This document shows, piece by piece, positions 5,368 through 15,578 of a stretch of DNA of 64,000 nucleotides. Each line of letters begins with the position of its first letter. Position 1 is the first letter of the stretch. Location: positions 1,054,001 through 1,118,000 of the forward strand of contig BQFW01000004.1 of the NCBI GenBank assembly GCA_020891255.1, in the 5' to 3' direction. The position numbers and the translations under genes were made by a program. This DNA comes from Entomortierella parvispora E1425. Taxonomy: Eukaryota; Fungi; Mortierellomycota. The notes under the pieces are model-generated. The model was given only the letters and a program-made list of their open reading frames with translations. It was not told where the DNA came from and searched no databases.

Positions 5368-8130
5368 TCTTTGAAGGTATGGTATTGTTTTATGATGAAA
5401 GGAGAGACAATGTTCAACGGGCAAAGAAAATTTTCTCATGAACGAGGTGCCACAAGCCGCTGTGGCAGTTGCATCCCCTTAAACTGCTGTAGTAGTAAAA
5501 AATTCTTCAGTTTCTGCCTCTGTGGGTACTAACTTTCAAAAGTTCAACATCTCGGATGAACGCTATGGCCACCAAAGATATCACCGGCTTGTAACGTGCT
5601 CGGACTTGGATGATGGCACTAGGAAAGATCGCACGAAGGAGTTTGAGCATGTTAAATGATAAGATAGGACTTCCTTATCAGCTTTCTTCACTGGACACCG
5701 GATTGAGGAAAGACCCTGTCCATATACTCATATTCTAGAACCCTTAGTTGAGTTTTTTTGTATGGATATTCAAGCGGAAGGATGCTACATCGTGCGTCGT
5801 TTTGCGATCTGTCACATACCAACCGATCATGAGAATATGGTCGCCATCCTGTCAATAGCCGTTCTCCTTTTCCAGCGAGAATTAAGTTACACAAAACGAA
5901 AGAAGAGCGGATCAGGTTGTCTTGGCCTCAAAGAAAGGAGGCAGGCTAATGATGACAGCATTTCAACAGATGACAGCAAAGGTGACCTCAACACTTGCTG
6001 CTATCCGCCACGTTCGGGTGCGTCAAAGTCAAGCCCCGAAAGTTCCATTCTCCTGGCTTAGGCCGTCGTTCAGCAAGCCAACAAGATGCTTGCCTGTGAT
6101 GATGTAATGTACATAGTTTGTAATCCTGCTACCTTTGACGCACACCGTAGGGTGGCCAATCCCACACGTCCTCTCCTCTCTCCTGTGCATTTTACAAACG
6201 TATTTCGCAGAACTGGCAGTGGCAAAAAAGCATTCAGGTGAAATGAACGTAAAAGTTTATGATACATGTCCATGTACAATAATATCTCTATTTCTCTTTT
6301 CTCTTTTCTCTTTTCTCTTCACAGCATTTTTGTAATTGAAGTCGAGGGAATATAATTCAAACTCAAAAATCGCGGTGGAGAATGAACACAGGTTCTGCTC
6401 ATCGATGTGTGATTGGCTGTTTTGGAGGAGACGCGTGAAGGACGCAAAGAAAAAACTGAAGCAGAGTTCAGCGCGTGCGGCTGGTGCGTGTCAGACTCTG
6501 CGAGAGAACGTGTCAAACAGCGTGACAGTGGCGAGGGGGTAAAGACCGGATCGTCCATGGCCCGAACAGGCTTTGCGGAAGCGATATTTTGTGATGGCCA
6601 AGGACTCCGCCGATTGTTTTTTTTTATGAATGGTGAGGGCTCATATATTTTGAGTCTTTTCCTGTGGTCAAACACTCATCTCAAATTTCTCTTCATACAC
6701 ACACAGCTGATAGAGTTAATGCTGTTTGTAGTCGAAACAATGAAACAATGACTTTGCTTCGCATGCATGAGGTCTTTTTTTATTTGCTTCGCAATAGACC
6801 ACCACTAAAGAGCAACCTGCTGACTGTCCTGGGTTGGGCGAATGCATCTTCTGCAATGGCGGCAAACTAGAAGATGCGACAAGTCATATGAATAAAATAA
6901 CACACAAGCACGCAGCAACAACAACAATAATAACAACAAAAAAAATCGATTCTCATTCCTCCATCTTGAAAAGAGACCTGAGGCAACCAACACATCTGCT
7001 GTTTCAACTTCTAAGGTATACCAATGTTCAGTCTCCTGGCTCATGTCTGAGATCTATCCAAATCTTTCTTGTCTGATCCTCCATCCTCGATTCTATTATC
7101 AAACCAGAAGGAGCAAAAGGGGCTAGCTGGCGTAGCGGAACGTAGAGTGGGCAGGGGTGGGGTGATGGATTGAATGTCTGCCTGCCAGGAAGCTCATCTC
7201 CATTCTTAGATGCAACATGTCTCTTACCTTTTGCACCTGCATTGCTAATCTTCGTTCTTCTCTCTTCTTTTTTTGTTTTTCCCGCGACACAATCTTCCAA
7301 TTCAACTCAACAAAAGCAGTAAAGTGATCGTGTTTGATCTGCTGAATGAAGAGAGCAAAGGTCAGAGGATGCAACATTACAACAGCAGCCATCAGACTAA
7401 CTCTGGTGAGCATATTTGTCGCAGAGAGGCTCTTGTTCATTCCGCCGTTCCTTGAACGCTTGAGCATGCCCGTCGTTCGCGCCAAAAAAAAAAAAAAATA
7501 CACACACAGACACGTACACGCAAAATGTCAACAAACAATAGCCATCCACATCCTCTATCCCCCTGTTACCATAGTATGAACCATTGTTTGCTGTGGAGTG
7601 TAAGGGGGTTGACCACAGCTATCAGACTTCTTTCTCTCACCCACACACAGTTTGTTCAAGGCTATTTGCCAGTTGCCAGTTGCCTTATGACCATCTGAAT
7701 CCCATGAGCACCAAAGAGCGATGAGCACTGAGATGGCCACTGAAAAAAAAAACCCCCCAGGGATCAAGCAGACGCTACATCTTTTTTCGATAGAGAACAT
7801 CTTTTCTGGTGGCAATATGGGCCCACCCATCAGTCGCCTCCATCTCTCAATGCTTTATTTATCAAAAGAGTTTGCCGTATGTTTTTATGTTCATGGACCG
7901 CCATGCAAACCACACTCGCAGCCCAACTCTCTGGGATTAGGATAAAAGTGTACCTCTCTTGTTCAGTCCATGTCAAGGGTGAGCCCTATTCCAACAATTG
8001 GGATCAAATGGATGGGTTGCCTCGTAGAAGTCCAAACCGCGGGAGATGGCGTCCATTACTGCCGGGAGAGACGGAGGTACTTAGCTATCTAAAATGAAGT
8101 CTTACGAGCCTTGTCCGAATGCTGCACTCG

Positions 8131-8161
8131 TACACACATACACATACACATACACATACAC
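8131..8161. repeat. (CACATA)n microsatellite
   Basis: tacacacatacacatacacatacacatacac seen directly. Confidence 0.85.
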
Positions 8162-9007
8162 AAACGCAAATACGGACATGTAGCTTGGATTTGAAAAAAA
8201 GAACAACACCCTGAGATGGTTTGATGTACCAGAGTTGATAGCTGCTTGATGTTGAAACTGCAAACGCGGTTTGATCTCATGATGCATAGAGGGCGGGAGG
8301 GAATGAACAATGTCAATCTTTACATCGTCACTGTCACCAATCGAACGAAAATAACAAAACAACGGTCAGAAGTCTCTGATTTTGTTTGTGATTGCACCAA
8401 TGGTCGACATGGTCTGGCGTATGTCCATGGCGGTCGTTTGGTTGACAAAGCAATTCAAAAGCTTGTAACAAAAAAAAAAGGAACCTGCGCCCAGGTCATC
8501 ACTCAAAACGCGAACCTGTTCTCCTGCCTGGGGTCGCAAAGTTCATTCATTGAACTGTACCTTCTATGCTCCTCGTTGCCTTCATTTCCCCTGAAGAAAG
8601 AGAAAAAGAACAAGGTCCGACTCTCAAAAAAAAAAAGGAAACTAGAGGCGAGAGACAAGAGACAATAGAAAAGTGTGCTCACTGCAGACAAATTATTCTT
8701 AATGCTGCTGTGAATAGAACAATGGAGGAAACCATTGGCGACATGGTCGGTAGGAGTGCAGAGGATGACCGCCATGGTCCCCTGACTCGATATATTGGTG
8801 TGTGGATGGTGGTGGTGACACCATGGATATGCAATTGCTCGCACCAGCACCGGGCGCCGCACGCACACGCACAAGGCAGCATGATCGAGACCACCAGACC
8901 GACCATCGGCCGTTCCTGACCATGGCCGCTTTTCCTTTCTTCCTCTTTTTTTATGTTTCGTTTTCCTTTGTTGACTTTTGCCTCCCCCCTCGTCCCTCCC
9001 CAAATCA

Positions 9008-9056
9008 CATCCATCCATCCATCCATCCATCCATCCATCCATCCATCCACCCATCC
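9008..9056. repeat. (CATC)n microsatellite, about 10 units
   Basis: catccatccatcc... run seen directly. Explains the MDGW/IHPS spurious ORFs. Confidence 0.95.
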
Positions 9057-9672
9057 CTCCCTCCCTCTAGCTCTTCTATTTCTATTCCCCTCCATCCTCC
9101 CTTCACACATCCCTTCCTTCCAACGAATCATCCTCCAATCTTACTTACCCGGCCCCTTGTCGACCACCATTCACTGCATTCGCTTTCCTTTGCACCAATC
9201 GCTCCCCATCCATCACCCTCAGTGCATTCCATTTCATACTCTTCATTACCTCCTCCATTCGTCTACGCCGATCACACCCTTTGTCCTGCAAAGAAACCCC
9301 GCCTGTACACGACCACGCCCTGAGACTTTGAAGGTTAACGCGCCTGTAAGTCACGTCCCGGATATTATGTCCAAGATATATATATTTGTTCTTTTCACTC
9401 TCCCCTTCGCCAACACACCAACCCGCCCGAGGCAACACAAATGAACACACCCAGGAGACAATGCGCCTGCAGGGGGCCTGTTGTACTTGCAGGCGTGGTG
9501 CAAACTGAAAAGAGGCTGGCCAAAGGCTATGCGATATCAATGTGGCTCGTCATGGCCACCGCACTGTTAGTGCAGCTCAAGCATGCAGGCTGTGAAGGGT
9601 CTGCACTCGATGCGGCTGTCTGTCCCCAGGCGACTCCTTTCTCCAAGGGGGTGTAAGGATGACTGGCTGACC

Positions 9673-9694
9673 GACTGACTGACTGACTGACTGA
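9673..9694. repeat. (GACT)n microsatellite
   Basis: gactgactgactgactgactga seen directly. Confidence 0.9.
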
Positions 9695-10169
9695 AGGGTT
9701 GGTTGGCTCAATCTGCTTCTTCGGTTGACCACCGTCAAGCGGGAGTGGGTGAGGAAGGGGTCGCGGGGGGAGAGGAGACAGGCAAACACGAAGACGAAGA
9801 AGGGGGCAGGCAATCTCCTCCCATCGCACCAGTCGATCAAAGACAGCGCACGATAGGAGAGAGTCGCACGAGCGACAGAAATGGCTTCTTCGGATCGACC
9901 CACGAAGACCACAGAAACCACAGACTTTGCTTGGACCATGCACCATGCATCATTGGACGCACAAAAGAGGGTATCCGTCCCGTAGACAGCCAAAGGGGTG
10001 TTGACAGTCGGCAGTCTCGTCCCCCTTTGCATATTCGACATTCTGTCCTCGTCTTTCTCTTGCTTCTTCTGTTCTGTCCCTCTTTCTGTCTTTCTGTCCA
10101 TCATCACTATTCTCCTTCCTCTGCACCGCACCGCACCGCACCCATCCTCAATCCTCACTACCTTTCATC

Positions 10170-11257
10170 ATGTCCAACTCTAAAACTAATCCTGCCTACT
10201 TCTCTTCCTTGGATCGTGAAACAGGCCCTCATCATCAGCGCCAGCACATACCACCGCGCCGACCCTATCCTCACGAGACCTACCTACACGAAGGCCAGAT
10301 CCACCACCAACCATCGCGGCGGGAACAACCTCAGGATCGGAGCATCCCACGTCAACAGGCACAACACCCAATCTCATTTCCACAGCACAATTATCATCGC
10401 CACCATTCTTCACTCCATCAGAACGGTGGGCCATCTTTAGAGCAGCAGATAGGCTATTACCCCTCCCAGCAGCCACCCAGCCAACGGCATTCTCAGGAGT
10501 ACCTACACCGCCATCTTAGCCCTCGATCACTGTTCATGAATCCAGACCCATATCTGGAAACGCCACATCTTCGGAATCCTTCGGGCGGAACGCTGTCCTC
10601 TGTAGAATACGACCCCGCAGAGGAGTACTCCATCTCCTCTATGGAAAACGACACTGCTGCCGGATACAAGAACAATTTGTCCGGGACATATGCACAGGAT
10701 TCAAGGTCGTTCGATCAAAGGTCACAAAAGCCCATATTTCAGTCTCGCCTCAGCCAACCTCAGCCGTATACCAACGGGGCTCAAACCCTCTCTACCTTTG
10801 CAACACCTCAGAGTTCGCCTCAGTCGGCCAGGAGTAATCAGCATTCCAACGGCCATGGGACGGGATCGTATCAATCAAGTAGTGGCAGTGAGGACGACCG
10901 GGATCATGAAAACCACGAGCCAGCACTGCCGGGTGAATTATCCAGGACAACATACCGCGTGCGACGGGACTCTGGACTACCACCGATCAAAATGAGCGCC
11001 GCAAAGAGATTGCCTCCCTTTAGCGCCAGTCTCTCTTCTATCCCAGCAGAGGCAGTACTGGAAGAAGAGGAAGAAGAGGACGAGGAGGAAGGTCACCATA
11101 TCAATGGCCATGAGCCTCTTCTGGATCACGAGGACGACGTTGAGGGCGTATCTCTCAATGACGATGAAGAGGTTGTACAAGTTCTCGATCGGGACATGGA
11201 CGTCCGCCAGGCGAGGAATCTACCAAAGGTCAAAGAGAACGGTGGACCAAAACAAAG
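10170..11257 (+). CDS. Disordered H/Q/S/E-rich coding exon; either its own gene or the first exon of the downstream CEP162-like gene
   Basis: Over 360 open codons from ATG 10170 ending at AG|GTATGT (11258). A phase-compatible acceptor (CATAG|C, 11866) with upstream ACTGAC and pyrimidine tract would join it in frame to the 11867-15578 ORF. Confidence 0.6.
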
Positions 11258-11866
11258 GTATGTACCAATGGCGTTTTGTGTCGTGTTGTGCAAGATAAAC
11301 AACATGCAGATGGAACCCCAATGCAAGATGGAACCACAATGCAGCAGGAAATAACAGGCACAACAGGGGTAGCAGGGGCAGCCATCAAAAAAAGATCCGT
11401 TCACGCCATTGGTGCCCATGATCAGGACCTTGGGTGCAGCATCGACCCATCCATTGCGCATTCCCAGCTGACGCGGCATGATATATCGCCCAGGGCAATT
11501 GGATCACGGAAAGCAAGGCGGGCGGGTGCATTTATGGTATAATTGTTTTTTTACCATCCTTTCCAGCACATTTTCCATATCCGCTGTTGACACCATGACG
11601 CTTGTCTATTCAGTGTGGAAAGAGCCCTACAGAATCTCGAATCTCACTCATCGCTCAGTCGCCTATGACCTTACAACTCATGTCAGGCTCTTTCGGCAGC
11701 TGCTCATGGGACCATGGGACGCCTGTGATGTTTACAACTTACCGTCGGTCGATCCCTAAAATTTTACCGCGCTGCAAAAAAAAAAAAAAAGTATAACCGT
11801 GTGCCACCACCGACTGACCATGGTTGTTTGTATCTCCTTTATTTTTGTGCTCCCCGTATCACATAG

Positions 11867-14800
11867 CCTAGCAAAACAGTCGTCTTTTCATCCATTTCCA
11901 TCACCACCCACAAGAACAATGCCCTCCACTACTGCCGCAACGACGACGTCTTCAGCTTCAATACCCCCATCGCGCCCCCAAGCTAGTGGCAGCAACCCCA
12001 ATGTTCAAAGACCTGTCGAACCAGATCGCGGCCCAGCCGATCTTAGTAACCCCAGTATGGCCCTAGCAGAAGCTCTGATAGCGGCGAGGTCAAAAGCAGA
12101 GGGAAAAGCAAAGGCGTTACAGAAGGCAGCGGCGTCTTCCAGTCATTTGGAAGGGAGCTCAAATGCAGGAAAGAGGCTGGTACCATCTGCATCCGCCGAC
12201 TCCAATGGTGCAACTGCTGGCAGCCAAATCCGTATCCCCGTCCCAAACCTGTCGCCAACGATAAGAGGCTTCCATTCTCAGAAGAGGAATCCAGAAGAGT
12301 CAACGTATCCTCACCGGACATCGTTTACACTTTCACCGACTTCATCCAACCCCGAGCTGGCAGAATCGCAGACCGACAGCCATTCTGGATCTTATGGGAC
12401 ACCCAGGCCAACGACTCACGGAGGGCGTCCAGTCCCTACTTCAGTGTCCACCAAATTTGTCGGCGTCACCAGTCGTGCAATGGGACCTAGTGTATCTTCG
12501 GATGTCTCTGCATTCTCGGACGAGTACAGTCACCATGAGCAGCAGTCAAAGCAACAGCAACAACAACATTTGCATGACGCTCACCTCAGCCACCACCAAA
12601 TGGATTCCAGTATCCTTGGCACTTCTTACGACTCTGCAATTTCCGCCGTTCAGGACGAGGGAAATTTTTCGCGGTTTGCGTTCCCAGGACATGATCTCGA
12701 TCAAAGCTCACTCCCAACTAATAGCTACACGGACAGTCTTCAGCATCCACTTGACTACCAACAGACTATGTCTGGAGAGTCTTCCAGTTTCCAGCAGGAC
12801 TATTCCAACACAAGGCCGCTGCGTTTGTCTACAGACTCAGATTCGCGTGTCTATACGGTCAACAAAGGAAAATCAGTCAAACATAATTATCACCACCATC
12901 ATGATCGACGAACGAATGGGCTGTCGGATTCGGCATCTATCTCTGCGTCGGCGTATCCCCCGACAGCGTCATCGATGGGCGAGGCTGAGGATCTGCAGGA
13001 CCAAATGAACACAGAAGCAGAGTATATCATGAACAGGAATACTGAGCTCTTGCGTATCTTGAGCATCCGGGACGAGGAAGTCCAGACCCTACAGCAGGAA
13101 CTGGATCATACTTTGAAGGTCATGCACGAATACGAGGATGACCTCATGGCAATGCATACGGCCGCCGCCAAGCCCTATGAGAGCTACCATCAGACCCTGG
13201 ACGAAATTGGTCACGAGATGACGCAGCAGGATGCAATTGTGAAGGGCTACCAACAGGAGAATGAAATGCTCACGAACCAGCTCAAGTCGTCTGTAGAGAT
13301 CCGACAAGAAGCAGAGAAACGTCACCTGCAGACAGTAGAAAAACTCAAGAATGAGTTGAACGAGCTTCGTGCCGAGCTAGATCGATCGGACAGTGACAAG
13401 TACGGCCAGGACGATTTGAGAACTCAGCTGAAAATCTCTCAAGAGATCCACGAGCATAGTCAAAAAGGATTCAAGGACAAGGAAGAAGAATACTTGGCCG
13501 AGATTGGATCTCTCAAGGATCAACTCAGGATGACAGAGCACGTCCTCGAAGAGGAACGTCGCGCCAAGGTCGAGGAGATGCAGCGGCTGGAGCGAGATAT
13601 CCAGGACTTCCGCGCTGGGTATAACGGCATGTTGGCACAACTCGAATCACTTGGACCCCATTACCGGATGCCACCGCTGAAGCGCGGATCCTCATCCTCT
13701 TCAGCAGATGATGGTCAGGCGGATACGACAGCAGGCGTGGACATTGAGAATGATCTTGCTCTTCTCAAGGCATCACCTCTGCATAGCAGAACCACATCCA
13801 GTCAGCATTCTGCTATTCCCTCACCCACCCTGTCGGAGAAGCAAGTGCATGGTTCAATGAAGCCAAAAACTCTGGATCGAAAGCTGACCTCTACCGAAAC
13901 CCTGACGACAGCGAATATGCCCAAGAGCGGAGAGCTTGACAAGATGGATTTGGCTCAGCGCATCAGCCGATTTGAAGCAGATGTGCGCCAGAGTTTGCTC
14001 CGAAGTGCGTCGATCGAGAGCTTCATCAGCGTTCGATCCTCGACTGGCACCGTGATCCCACAGACATCGCAACTTAAACCCCACTCCCGTCCTCACGGGA
14101 GCGCCTCTTCCAGGGATGATCTTCGACTGTCTGCTATGAGTGAAGAGCACCGACTGGCCAACAAACTACGTGATCGGATCAACAGCCTCAATGTGGAAAA
14201 CAAACGGTTGCATACGGAGCTCTCTTCTCTTTCTCTGGTGCTGAGGCAACAGCAGGCGGAACGGCAGCGTCGAGTGGCCCAGCTGGAGGAGCTTTTGGAC
14301 ATGCACGAAACTGTTGCAAACAAAAAGCTGGACGACGCCGACACGGAAGAGGGGCAGACAAGGATCCGAAAAGTTGTCCAAGGCTTAATGGTCAAGATCC
14401 GGACAAAAGAAGCTGAAGCCGAGTTTTATCACAACGCGTACTTGGATAAAGTCATGGAGCTAGATCAAATGGCGCTGGCAAACGGCAAGACTCTGGCCAT
14501 GGAGGGCTTGTCCGATGAAAGGCCATCGTCCTCATCGCAAGCTATGGTGGATGGACTCGCCGTCTCGGGACCGATTTCGGCTAGTGTTATTGAGGCTCTG
14601 GAGAACCGTGTCAAGGAGTTGGAGCGAATCAACAAGGAGGCTGCGTTCAGACTTGCGGCAGAGCAGCGACGCGCTCAAGCAGCCGAGACGGAAAACGCAA
14701 CATTGATTCGGGAAAAACTTACGCTCTCGCGCATGCTGGAGGATCAAGTCGATCAGCTGCAGACGAAATTGAGCGTGGCGGATGTGGCCAAGGCAAGGCT

Positions 14801-15578
14801 CGAAGATGAGAATGCTGCGCTTCGACAGCAGCAGCAACAAGATCAAGGCGAGCGTGCGCCAGGAGTCGGCGGTCGAGCGGAGCAGACCTCTCACTTGGAT
14901 CCTGCCAACGCAGAGTCAATGGCGATCATGAGGACCCGAATGCTCTCTCTCACTCGACAGCGGGATCAGCTGAGAGAGCAGCTGCAAGAGGCTTTTGATA
15001 TCCAGTTGACCATGCAGGATCGCGCGGCAGGAGGCGTCCCTGAATGGTCAGTGGATGACTACAAGCGCCTGGAGCGAGCACTGGAGGAGAAGACGACGGA
15101 GTTAAGCATTTGGAAGGAGCGAGCTGTGGCCTTGGAAAAGGTTGTGGAGCGTATTCGAATGATCAAGGACCGTCCTGAGCCTATTGGGCTCTCGATGGAT
15201 CGACACGGCCGTCGACGATCTTCGTCCAGTGCACAAGAGACTGGATCCCTCAGCTCGTCCACATCTGCGGCGAGTCGACGCAACAACTACTCGCACCATC
15301 ACCACTCATCCCACTCGGGCCAGCACACTCTGGAGGAGCTCGACCAGGTGGTCCTCCGACTGGAGCAGCGGCTGGAACGTCGAGATCAGGAGCTGCAGGA
15401 GGTGGTCCAAGAGGCCAAGCGACAGACAGATTTGAGATTGGAAGCCTGGAAGTCCAAATGGGTCCAGGTTGTTCAGCGCAAGAATGCAGAAATTCATCGG
15501 TTCCAGGTCGAACTCGAGTCGTTGATGGCAGCCGTAGACCGCGATCGGGCCAGGATGGCGGCCTCGATGAAGAAGTAA
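11867..15578 (+). CDS. Large coiled-coil protein, CEP162/QN1-like (centriole distal-end/transition-zone protein)
   Basis: Uninterrupted ~1,240-codon ORF (first ATG of likely use 11919). Motifs QQDAIVKGYQQENEMLTNQLK and C-terminal RRDQELQEVVQE...KWVQVVQRKNAEIHRFQVELESLM resemble my recollection of CEP162 (LQGYQQENERLYNQVK; REQELQQIIQQ...KWKRLAQLKNRELEKFRTELDSIL). Confidence 0.72.

What the first reader, a model, noticed from the sequence alone, without database searches (positions are those of the whole stretch)
11867..15578. CEP162-like ciliary transition-zone protein in an apparently non-flagellated fungus
Two non-generic motifs occur in the same order as in animal CEP162/QN1. Mid-protein: QQDAIVKGYQQENEMLTNQLK versus recalled QETLLQGYQQENERLYNQVK. 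Extreme C-terminus: RRDQELQEVVQE...KWVQVVQRKNAEIHRFQVELESLMAAV versus REQELQQIIQQ...KWKRLAQLKNRELEKFRTELDSILDVL. CEP162 is established as a microtubule-binding distal-centriole protein that seeds the transition zone. If the host is Mortierellaceae (inferred; no flagella or centrioles), an intact copy implies a repurposed role, e.g. at an uncharacterised spindle-pole body or nucleus-associated MTOC. This is the best candidate for an undescribed system in the window.
Basis: partly seen in the sequence, partly recalled or inferred. Interest (0 to 1): 0.85.

Follow-up and report, generated by a model that had tools for sequence, protein, structure and literature searches.

The report
CEP162 homologue in a flagellum-less fungus
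A soil fungus that has no flagella or centrioles (Entomortierella parvispora) keeps an intact, strongly conserved copy of CEP162, a protein that in animals sits at the tip of the centriole and starts building the base of the cilium. The gene must therefore do another job here, probably at the spindle or spindle pole.

Summary
Window 11867-15578 is exon 2 of a two-exon gene, EMPS_02907 of Entomortierella parvispora (Mortierellaceae). Both quoted motifs are present.

- **C-terminal domain.** The last ~75 residues carry an unmarked hit (E<=1e-5) to the Pfam family CEP162_C (PF27882).
- **Unbiased search.** A Mortierellaceae-only profile run against 1.84 billion proteins returned 34 hits. They were Mortierellaceae, Glomeromycota, Calcarisporiella, chytrid CEP162 proteins, mussel CEP162/QN1 C-terminal fragments and short unnamed fragments that match only the two motif blocks. 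No hit that carries a name is from an unrelated coiled-coil family.
- **Profile-profile tests.** Against animal-type C-termini: probability 98.8%, score 91, versus 23 or less for 200 shuffles. The whole ~800-residue helical region aligns collinearly with chytrid CEP162 (99.6%, 671 columns).
- **Descent and constraint.** The gene tree follows the species tree. Synonymous sites are saturated, while dN/dS is about 0.01 in the C-terminal domain.

This is a vertically retained, constrained CEP162 orthologue in fungi without cilia. A 2026 survey scored CEP162 as specific to flagellated fungi.

A role at the spindle pole body or spindle microtubules is inference. It is a new member of a known family, already half-labelled by automatic annotation, not a new system. 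The match of the mid motif to a named animal CEP162 could not be tested.

The parts
10170..11257 (+). Exon 1. The annotated start is the ATG at 10536. The ATG at 10170 is the more likely start and adds 122 residues.
   Evidence: P0001 begins at 10536. The upstream 122 aa are in frame and 34% identical over 145 aa to the N-terminus of the Gryganskiella orthologue, E 3e-16. A second strain carries an in-frame 3-nt insertion at 10466.
11258..11866 (+). Intron of 609 nt, GT..AG
   Evidence: Joining 11257 to 11867 reproduces P0001 exactly. In strain X3, indels inside this span are 1 or 4 nt, whereas those in the exons are 3 nt.
11867..15578 (+). Exon 2, including the stop codon.
11867..12983 (+). 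The exon-2 part of the Ser/Thr/Pro/Gln-rich N-terminal region. It is specific to Mortierellaceae and contains short invariant motifs at 12024-12101 and 12315-12410.
   Evidence: Composition; invariant columns; no alignable similarity to the N-termini of Glomeromycota or chytrid proteins
12984..15575 (+). Conserved helical (coiled-coil type) region, P0001 residues 614-1477: nine long predicted helices separated by disordered linkers
   Evidence: AlphaFold2 secondary structure. Collinear hhalign with chytrid CEP162 (99.6%, 671 columns) and with Glomeromycota (100%, 774 columns).
13197..13658 (+). Mid block (profile positions 72-225), containing the GYQxENExL motif at 13224-13286
   Evidence: This is the stretch that matches chytrid CEP162 proteins at E 1e-5 to 1e-8 in the 1.84e9-protein scan. 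The motif is conserved in all chytrid and most Glomeromycota members.
13872..13922 (+). Invariant Ser/Thr-rich linker motif (LDRKLTSTETLTTANMP), followed by a conserved RxxS-rich stretch. A candidate phospho-regulated linker.
   Evidence: Invariant columns; coordinates. The regulatory role is inference.
14424..14453 (+). FYHNAYLDKV block, shared with Glomeromycota (YYQNAYLEK) and recognisable in chytrids
   Evidence: Alignment A3
15324..15536 (+). CEP162_C domain (P0001 residues 1394-1464), the most constrained part of the protein
   Evidence: Pfam PF27882:CEP162_C on record for this protein. hhalign against animal-type C-termini gives 98.8%, E 4.7e-17, with controls. dN/dS is about 0.009 and identity to Gryganskiella is 99%.

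Best explanation
The gene encodes the Mortierellaceae orthologue of CEP162 (QN1/KIAA1009). It was inherited vertically from the flagellated ancestor of fungi and kept after flagella and centrioles were lost. The protein has a lineage-specific, disordered, Ser/Thr-rich N-terminal half. This is followed by about 860 residues of segmented long helices that align end to end with chytrid CEP162, and it ends in the CEP162_C domain. These points are shown here: the homology, the collinearity, the vertical descent and the strong purifying selection. The following is inferred. The protein works as an elongated, probably dimeric, microtubule-associated scaffold. Its C-terminal domain docks it to a fixed structure, most likely the spindle pole body or nucleus-associated microtubule-organising centre. 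In mammals the equivalent CC3 region docks CEP162 to the distal centriole. The upstream helices would bind spindle or cytoplasmic microtubules, as CC1/CC2 do in mammals. In other words, the mitotic/microtubule side of CEP162 function has survived without the ciliary side. The N-terminal region and the linkers probably carry phospho-regulation.
For: Identity and host. Pfam CEP162_C is on record, unmarked, for this protein and for its Gryganskiella and Acaulospora relatives. The same family, plus CEP162_coil_mid, is on record for mussel QN1/CEP162. The unbiased profile scan of 1.84e9 proteins gave 34 hits at E<=1e-3. They were Mortierellaceae, Glomeromycota (Acaulospora, 2.5e-37), chytrids (one named CEP162 by UniRef), Calcarisporiella, mussel CEP162 fragments (2.7e-7), and unnamed fragments that match only the two motif blocks. 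hhalign results are. The tree is chytrids | (Calcarisporiella,(Glomeromycota,Mortierellaceae)), with both paralogues retained in five sampled taxa of the Linnemannia-Haplosporangium group. Overall dN is 0.12 with dS saturated, and dN/dS is about 0.009 in CEP162_C. The frame is preserved in a second strain. The predicted architecture is all-helical and segmented. The functional analogy rests on the literature: human CEP162 binds microtubules through CC1/CC2 and centrioles through CC3, and a truncated form still decorates the mitotic spindle (PMC10104899).
Against: No localisation, interaction or expression data exist; no RNA run was listed. The only CEP162 Pfam family on record for the Mortierella protein is CEP162_C; CEP162_coil_mid and CEP162_helical_3 are not recorded. 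The conserved animal tail after the domain (LQKQGVV.P) is absent. According to a 184-proteome survey, the known partners CEP290 and CEP131 are restricted to flagellated fungi, so the animal mechanism cannot be transferred as it stands. No named full-length animal CEP162 could be fetched, so homology over the full length rests on the chytrid proteins as a bridge.
Confidence: 0.8

Rival explanations
1. Domain sharing only. This would be an otherwise unrelated fungal coiled-coil protein that merely carries a CEP162_C-like C-terminal module, so it would not be an orthologue of CEP162.
For: Only CEP162_C is on record in Pfam for the Mortierella protein. The N-terminal halves are not alignable between fungal groups. 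Against mussel CEP162, only the last ~70 columns align confidently.
Against: One collinear profile-profile alignment covers 671 columns, from the mid block to the C-terminus, against chytrid CEP162 (99.6%, E 1e-23). Off-diagonal alternatives reach 26% or less. The chytrid proteins likewise have only CEP162_C on record, yet UniRef names them CEP162 and an orthogroup study recovers them as CEP162. The related metagenomic proteins P0088 and P0073 carry the same mid motif together with CEP162_helical_3 and CEP162_C.
Confidence: 0.1
2. A true CEP162 orthologue whose retained job is not at the spindle pole. It could act in septation or cytokinesis, nuclear positioning along cytoplasmic microtubules, or vesicle or organelle tethering in coenocytic hyphae.
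For: UniRef labels two Linnemannia paralogues 'Up-regulated during septation protein'. The language-model neighbours are assorted fungal coiled-coil proteins, including TMF/golgin-type and Cnn/ApsB-type proteins. Its animal partners are reported as absent from non-flagellated fungi.
Against: No Pfam Uds1 hit, or any other family, at E<=1 in the local Pfam scan of five members. The Atlas scores share few features and are stated to be leads only. The best-conserved part is the domain that in mammals gives docking to a microtubule-organising structure.
Confidence: 0.3
3. Chance resemblance between compositionally similar coiled coils, or an artefact such as contamination or horizontal transfer.
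For: Coiled coils are notorious for spurious matches. Generic coiled-coil chains in the PDB give 12-19 bits against the family profile.
Against: Real matches score 40-145 bits in a 1.84e9-sequence search, and every named hit belongs to the family. Reversed and heptad-preserving shuffles reach a score of at most 23, against 90.8 for the real alignment. The conserved residues include non-heptad W, F, N and G/Y positions. The gene is present in all 48 Mortierellaceae entries found, and its tree is congruent with taxonomy.
Confidence: 0.02

Closest known systems
Animal CEP162 (QN1/KIAA1009; human, 1403 aa)
   Same: Similar size: about 1600 aa on the extended model (1477 as annotated) versus 1403. 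A disordered N-terminal part is followed by segmented coiled coils, and a CEP162_C domain sits at the extreme C-terminus. The human C-terminal CC3 region is the centriole-docking part.
   Different: The organism has no centrioles or cilia. The animal C-terminal tail LQKQGVV.P is missing. There is no recorded hit to CEP162_coil_mid or CEP162_helical_3. The N-terminal half is unrelated. The partners CEP290 and CEP131 are reported as absent from non-flagellated fungi.
Chytrid CEP162 orthologues (e.g. Physocladia P0057, Rhizoclosmatium P0083, Chytriomyces confervae P0085)
   Same: Collinear alignment over 671 columns. Shared GYQxENEKL block, YIR/AYLDK-type blocks, a W-containing helix and the C-terminal domain. 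All have CEP162_C on record.
   Different: Only about 20% identity. The chytrids are flagellated, so their copy presumably still serves the basal body. The N-termini are unrelated.
Glomeromycota relatives (Rhizophagus P0090, Acaulospora P0050, Gigaspora P0051)
   Same: The nearest relatives outside the family. hhalign gives 100% over 774 columns, and they have CEP162_C on record. They are also non-flagellated.
   Different: 22-24% identity. They have their own N-terminal regions, and their C-terminal block is closer to the animal form (KW..I.DKKNSEI.GFRNELE..M).
Fungal spindle-pole coiled-coil proteins (SnaD, ApsB/Mto1-type Cnn_1N proteins) and Uds1
   Same: Long fungal coiled-coil proteins. 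They are the nearest clusters by language-model features (score 0.92-0.93).
   Different: No sequence-level support. There is no Cnn_1N or Uds1 Pfam hit, and none appeared in the profile scan.

Membership tests
CEP162 (Pfam CEP162_C PF27882 and related CEP162 models) | CEP162_C domain at the extreme C-terminus | tested here: met
   PF27882:CEP162_C is on record, unmarked (E<=1e-5), for P0001. The family name was read from mussel QN1. hhalign against animal-type C-termini gives 98.8%, E 4.7e-17, with controls scoring 23 or less. Copies truncated before the C-terminus lack the hit.
CEP162 | A long segmented coiled-coil C-terminal two-thirds (CC1-CC3) behind a disordered N-terminal region | tested here: met
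   AlphaFold2 predicts nine helices of 28-138 residues separated by low-confidence linkers. Composition: the N-terminus is 48% S/T/P/G/Q/N, and the C-terminal part is 44% E/L/K/R/Q. The human layout comes from PMC10104899. Coiled-coil pairing itself was not computed.
CEP162 | Collinear homology along the helical region with accepted CEP162 orthologues | tested here: met
   Against chytrid CEP162: 99.6%, E 1.2e-23, 671 columns, in a single diagonal. The chytrid proteins are named CEP162 by UniRef and were recovered as CEP162 homologues in PMC13358043.
CEP162 | The mid GYQQENE-type block in named animal CEP162, in the same order | not testable with these tools
The mussel loci hold only C-terminal exons. 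The unnamed fragments P0070, P0074 and P0077 carry the block.
CEP162 | The other Pfam CEP162 modules (CEP162_coil_mid PF27944, CEP162_helical_3 PF27821) | tested here: not met
   Neither is on record for P0001 or for the chytrids. Only weak collinear similarity exists upstream of the C-terminal domain (11 bits). These models are missing from the local Pfam copy, so no scores could be computed here.
CEP162 | Microtubule binding, distal-centriole localisation, and binding to CEP290 and CEP131 | not testable with these tools
   These are experimental properties. The organism lacks centrioles, and CEP290 and CEP131 are reported as specific to flagellated fungi.
Uds1 (Up-regulated during septation, PF15456) | Match to the Uds1 Pfam model | tested here: not met
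   No hit at E<=1 for P0001, or for the Linnemannia protein P0021 that UniRef names this way.

The most novel reading that the evidence does not exclude
CEP162_C is a docking module for a centriole-derived core that survives, unrecognised, inside the spindle pole body of Mortierellomycota and Glomeromycota. A comparable case is the nine-fold ring seen in the Coemansia spindle pole body. On this reading, the gene would be a molecular marker of a vestigial distal-centriole structure, and a handle on how spindle pole bodies evolved on top of centrioles.
Probability: 0.15. Interest if true: 0.8.

Novelty: new member of a known kind. Interest (0 to 1): 0.55.

Why it matters
In animals CEP162 is treated as a cilium and centriole protein. 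The most recent fungal survey (PMC13358043) sampled Mortierellomycotina and Glomeromycotina and still scored CEP162 as specific to flagellated fungi, found in chytrids only.

The results here show an intact orthologue under strong constraint in every Mortierellaceae entry found, duplicated and retained in the Linnemannia-Haplosporangium group, and related genes in Glomeromycota and Calcarisporiella. So the family has a function that needs neither cilia nor centrioles.

The part that is best conserved is the C-terminal domain, which lies in the region that docks mammalian CEP162 to centrioles. This gives a concrete, testable entry point into two open problems. One is the composition of the microtubule-organising centre in Mucoromycota, which I believe is largely uncharacterised (my own knowledge; no paper on it was found here). 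The other is how spindle pole bodies replaced centrioles. It also corrects a phylogenetic profile used to define 'flagellum-specific' genes.

Tried and rejected
- **Local Pfam-A:** no hit. The copy lacks the CEP162 models.
- **PDB sequence searches:** no CEP162 entry, only weak generic coiled-coil matches.
- **ESM Atlas, three searches** (whole protein, C-terminal part, mussel QN1): only generic coiled-coil clusters with few shared features. These were treated as uninformative.
- **Bridging searches to reach named full-length animal CEP162:** the chytrid query found only chytrids, two unlabelled proteins (P0088, P0089) and Rhizophagus. The mixed-alignment query found only Mortierellaceae.
- **tblastn of mid-block queries on three mussel loci:** nothing found. 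Those loci hold only C-terminal exons, partly duplicated.
- **RNA evidence:** no RNA run was listed. The runs that were laid were DNA contigs of other strains.
- **Uds1 and septation naming:** rejected for lack of any Pfam support.
- **Fold search:** not run, because the model is a set of long helices with pTM 0.20 and would give meaningless matches.
- **N-terminal homology between fungal groups:** none found.
- **Earlier findings of this scan:** nothing relevant at this locus.
Full report
**What is in the window**

A single open frame runs from 11799 to 15578 on the + strand. The translated protein is 100% identical to the C-terminal 1236 residues of EMPS_02907, a 1477-residue 'hypothetical protein' of Entomortierella parvispora. 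It lies on a 2.9-Mb contig of assembly GCA_020891255.1.

Matching that protein to the DNA gives a two-exon gene. Exon 1 ends at 11257, a 609-nt GT..AG intron spans 11258-11866, and exon 2 starts at 11867. Both quoted motifs are present: the mid motif at 13224-13286, and the C-terminal block at 15324-15536, just before the stop.

The annotated start (10536) is probably too far downstream. The ATG at 10170 is in frame and adds 122 residues. These are homologous to the N-terminus of the Gryganskiella orthologue (34% identity over 145 aa, E 3e-16).

**Is the gene real and functional?**

- All 48 relatives found in the first search are from Mortierellaceae (61-84% identical over the region that was scored; the two Actinomortierella proteins 43-44%). 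They show long runs of invariant columns.
- Against the Gryganskiella gene, synonymous sites are saturated while dN is 0.12 overall. dN is 0.015 in the C-terminal block, where dN/dS is about 0.009.
- A contig from a second strain of the same species label covers the whole gene. Its indels are multiples of three in the exons and 1 or 4 nt inside the intron.
- No RNA run was listed, so expression and the splice site are not shown directly.
- A duplication in the Linnemannia-Haplosporangium group has been kept as two paralogues in five sampled taxa.

**Is it CEP162?**

*Curated families.* The local Pfam copy gave no hit. However, the precomputed annotation attached to the public protein lists PF27882. 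I read that accession's name from a mussel protein that NCBI calls QN1 and UniRef calls 'Centrosomal protein of 162 kDa': it is CEP162_C, and the mussel protein also carries PF27944, CEP162_coil_mid. For the window's protein the CEP162_C hit is unmarked, which by the tool's definition means E<=1e-5. Mortierellaceae entries truncated before the C-terminus lack the hit, which places the domain at the C-terminal end.

*Unbiased search.* I built a profile from 12 Mortierellaceae sequences only (residues 614-1477) and ran it against 1.84 billion representative proteins. Only 34 proteins reached E<=1e-3. By name they are:
- Mortierellaceae.
- Glomeromycota: Acaulospora 2.5e-37 and Gigaspora 2.4e-28, both matched over almost the whole profile, plus Ambispora, Paraglomus, Entrophospora and Glomus.
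- Chytrids: Obelidium, Siphonaria, Physocladia (named CEP162 by UniRef), Entophlyctis, Chytriomyces, Polychytrium and others.
- Calcarisporiella.
- Two clusters of mussel 'CEP162-like/QN1' fragments (2.7e-7 and 6.6e-7).
- Short unnamed fragments.

Among the hits that carry a name, none belongs to an unrelated coiled-coil family. The unnamed hits match only the two motif blocks. The chytrids match through the mid block and, more weakly, their extreme C-termini. The animal fragments match through the C-terminal block.

*Controls.* In hhalign, 39 Mortierellaceae C-termini against six animal-type C-terminal fragments (three mussel CEP162-like, three unnamed) gave probability 98.8%, E 4.7e-17 and score 90.8 over 72 columns. 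The reversed alignment scored 14. One hundred column shuffles and one hundred heptad-phase-preserving shuffles scored at most 23. Generic coiled coils in the PDB reach only 12-19 bits against the family profile.

**Orthologue, or just a shared domain?**

Profile-profile alignment of the Mortierellaceae helical region against 15 chytrid-clade proteins gives one diagonal of 671 columns running from the mid block to the C-terminus (99.6%, E 1.2e-23). Off-diagonal alternatives reach at most 26%. Against Glomeromycota the figures are 100% and 774 columns. Glomeromycota against chytrids gives 99.9%.

The multiple alignment shows several collinear blocks besides the two motifs: a YIR-type block, the AYLDK block and a Trp-containing helix. 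All three fungal groups align to the mussel CEP162 C-terminus at about 97% probability, at the equivalent terminal position.

Two intronless metagenomic relatives carry the same mid motif and have both CEP162_helical_3 and CEP162_C on record.

A maximum-likelihood tree gives chytrids | (Calcarisporiella,(Glomeromycota,Mortierellaceae)). This is the pattern expected from vertical descent.

The N-terminal halves are not alignable between the groups. The Mortierella protein lacks the animal C-terminal tail and has no recorded hits to the other CEP162 Pfam modules. I could not obtain a named full-length animal CEP162, so the mid motif's match to animal CEP162 remains a lead rather than a test.

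**Architecture**

AlphaFold2, run on the family alignment, predicts nine long helices separated by low-confidence linkers and no globular domain. The N-terminal ~600 residues are rich in Ser, Thr, Pro and Gln, and hold a few short motifs invariant within Mortierellaceae. This layout resembles human CEP162, which has three coiled-coil stretches in its C-terminal part.

**How it probably works**

In human cells CEP162 binds microtubules through CC1/CC2 and centrioles through CC3. A truncation that removes nearly all of the coiled coils still decorates the mitotic spindle but is lost from the basal body (PMC10104899).

Mortierellaceae are described without cilia, and the neighbouring Glomeromycotina without cilia or centrioles. 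A 184-proteome survey scores CEP290, CEP131 and CEP162 itself as specific to flagellated fungi.

The most likely reading is that the non-ciliary side of CEP162 function has been retained. On this reading the protein is a microtubule-associated scaffold. Its most constrained part, the C-terminal domain, would dock it to a fixed structure such as the spindle pole body. This step is inference. Septation, nuclear positioning or tethering roles are not excluded.

**Novelty**

The family is known, Pfam models exist, and UniRef already auto-names one Mortierellaceae orthologue as CEP162. This is therefore a new member of a known kind, not a new system.

It does contradict the published statement that fungal CEP162 homologues occur only in Chytridiomycota. 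It also extends retention to Mortierellaceae and Glomeromycota, plus one weaker hit in Calcarisporiella (E 1e-4). That is of moderate interest for centrosome and spindle-pole-body evolution, particularly given the centriole-like ring reported in the Coemansia spindle pole body (PMC6070874).

Noticed in passing
window 10170-10535: The annotated start of EMPS_02907 (10536) looks truncated. An in-frame ATG at 10170 adds 122 residues that are homologous to the N-terminus of the Gryganskiella orthologue. A second strain has an in-frame 3-nt insertion here.
   Followed up: partly
proteins P0020/P0037, P0021/P0036, P0024/P0038, P0027/P0032, P0028/P0040: The gene was duplicated in the Linnemannia-Haplosporangium group of Mortierellaceae. 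Both paralogues are kept in all five sampled taxa, in two clades each with 100% support.
   Followed up: partly
window 5440-10170: About 4.7 kb upstream of the gene has no called gene and no long ORF. Overlapping ORFs at about 8.5-9.4 kb translate as short peptide repeats (GWMD on one strand, IHPS on the other), which suggests a 12-nt tandem repeat.
   Followed up: no
L005 (Mytilus trossulus) 76454-87188; L001 and L006 (M. edulis): Mussel genomes hold several partial copies of the last CEP162 exon(s), three within 11 kb in L005. They are annotated as separate short 'CEP162-like/QN1' proteins. No mid-block exon lies within reach.
   Followed up: partly
window 17254 onward (L002 16719-25043): The downstream gene encodes a 2583-residue product with no Pfam family on record. 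Another first-stage note calls it a CHD7/Kismet-type remodeler.
   Followed up: no
proteins P0021, P0036 (Linnemannia gamsii): UniRef names these CEP162-family paralogues 'Up-regulated during septation protein'. The local Pfam scan of P0021 gives no Uds1 match (P0036 was not scanned), so the name looks like an annotation error.
   Followed up: partly
PMC13358043, supplementary table: The 2026 fungal flagellum atlas lists CEP162 as specific to flagellated fungi, with 3 proteins, although it sampled Mortierellomycotina and Glomeromycotina. Its orthogroup method evidently missed these divergent homologues, and other 'flagellum-specific' calls for coiled-coil proteins may suffer in the same way.
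   Followed up: partly
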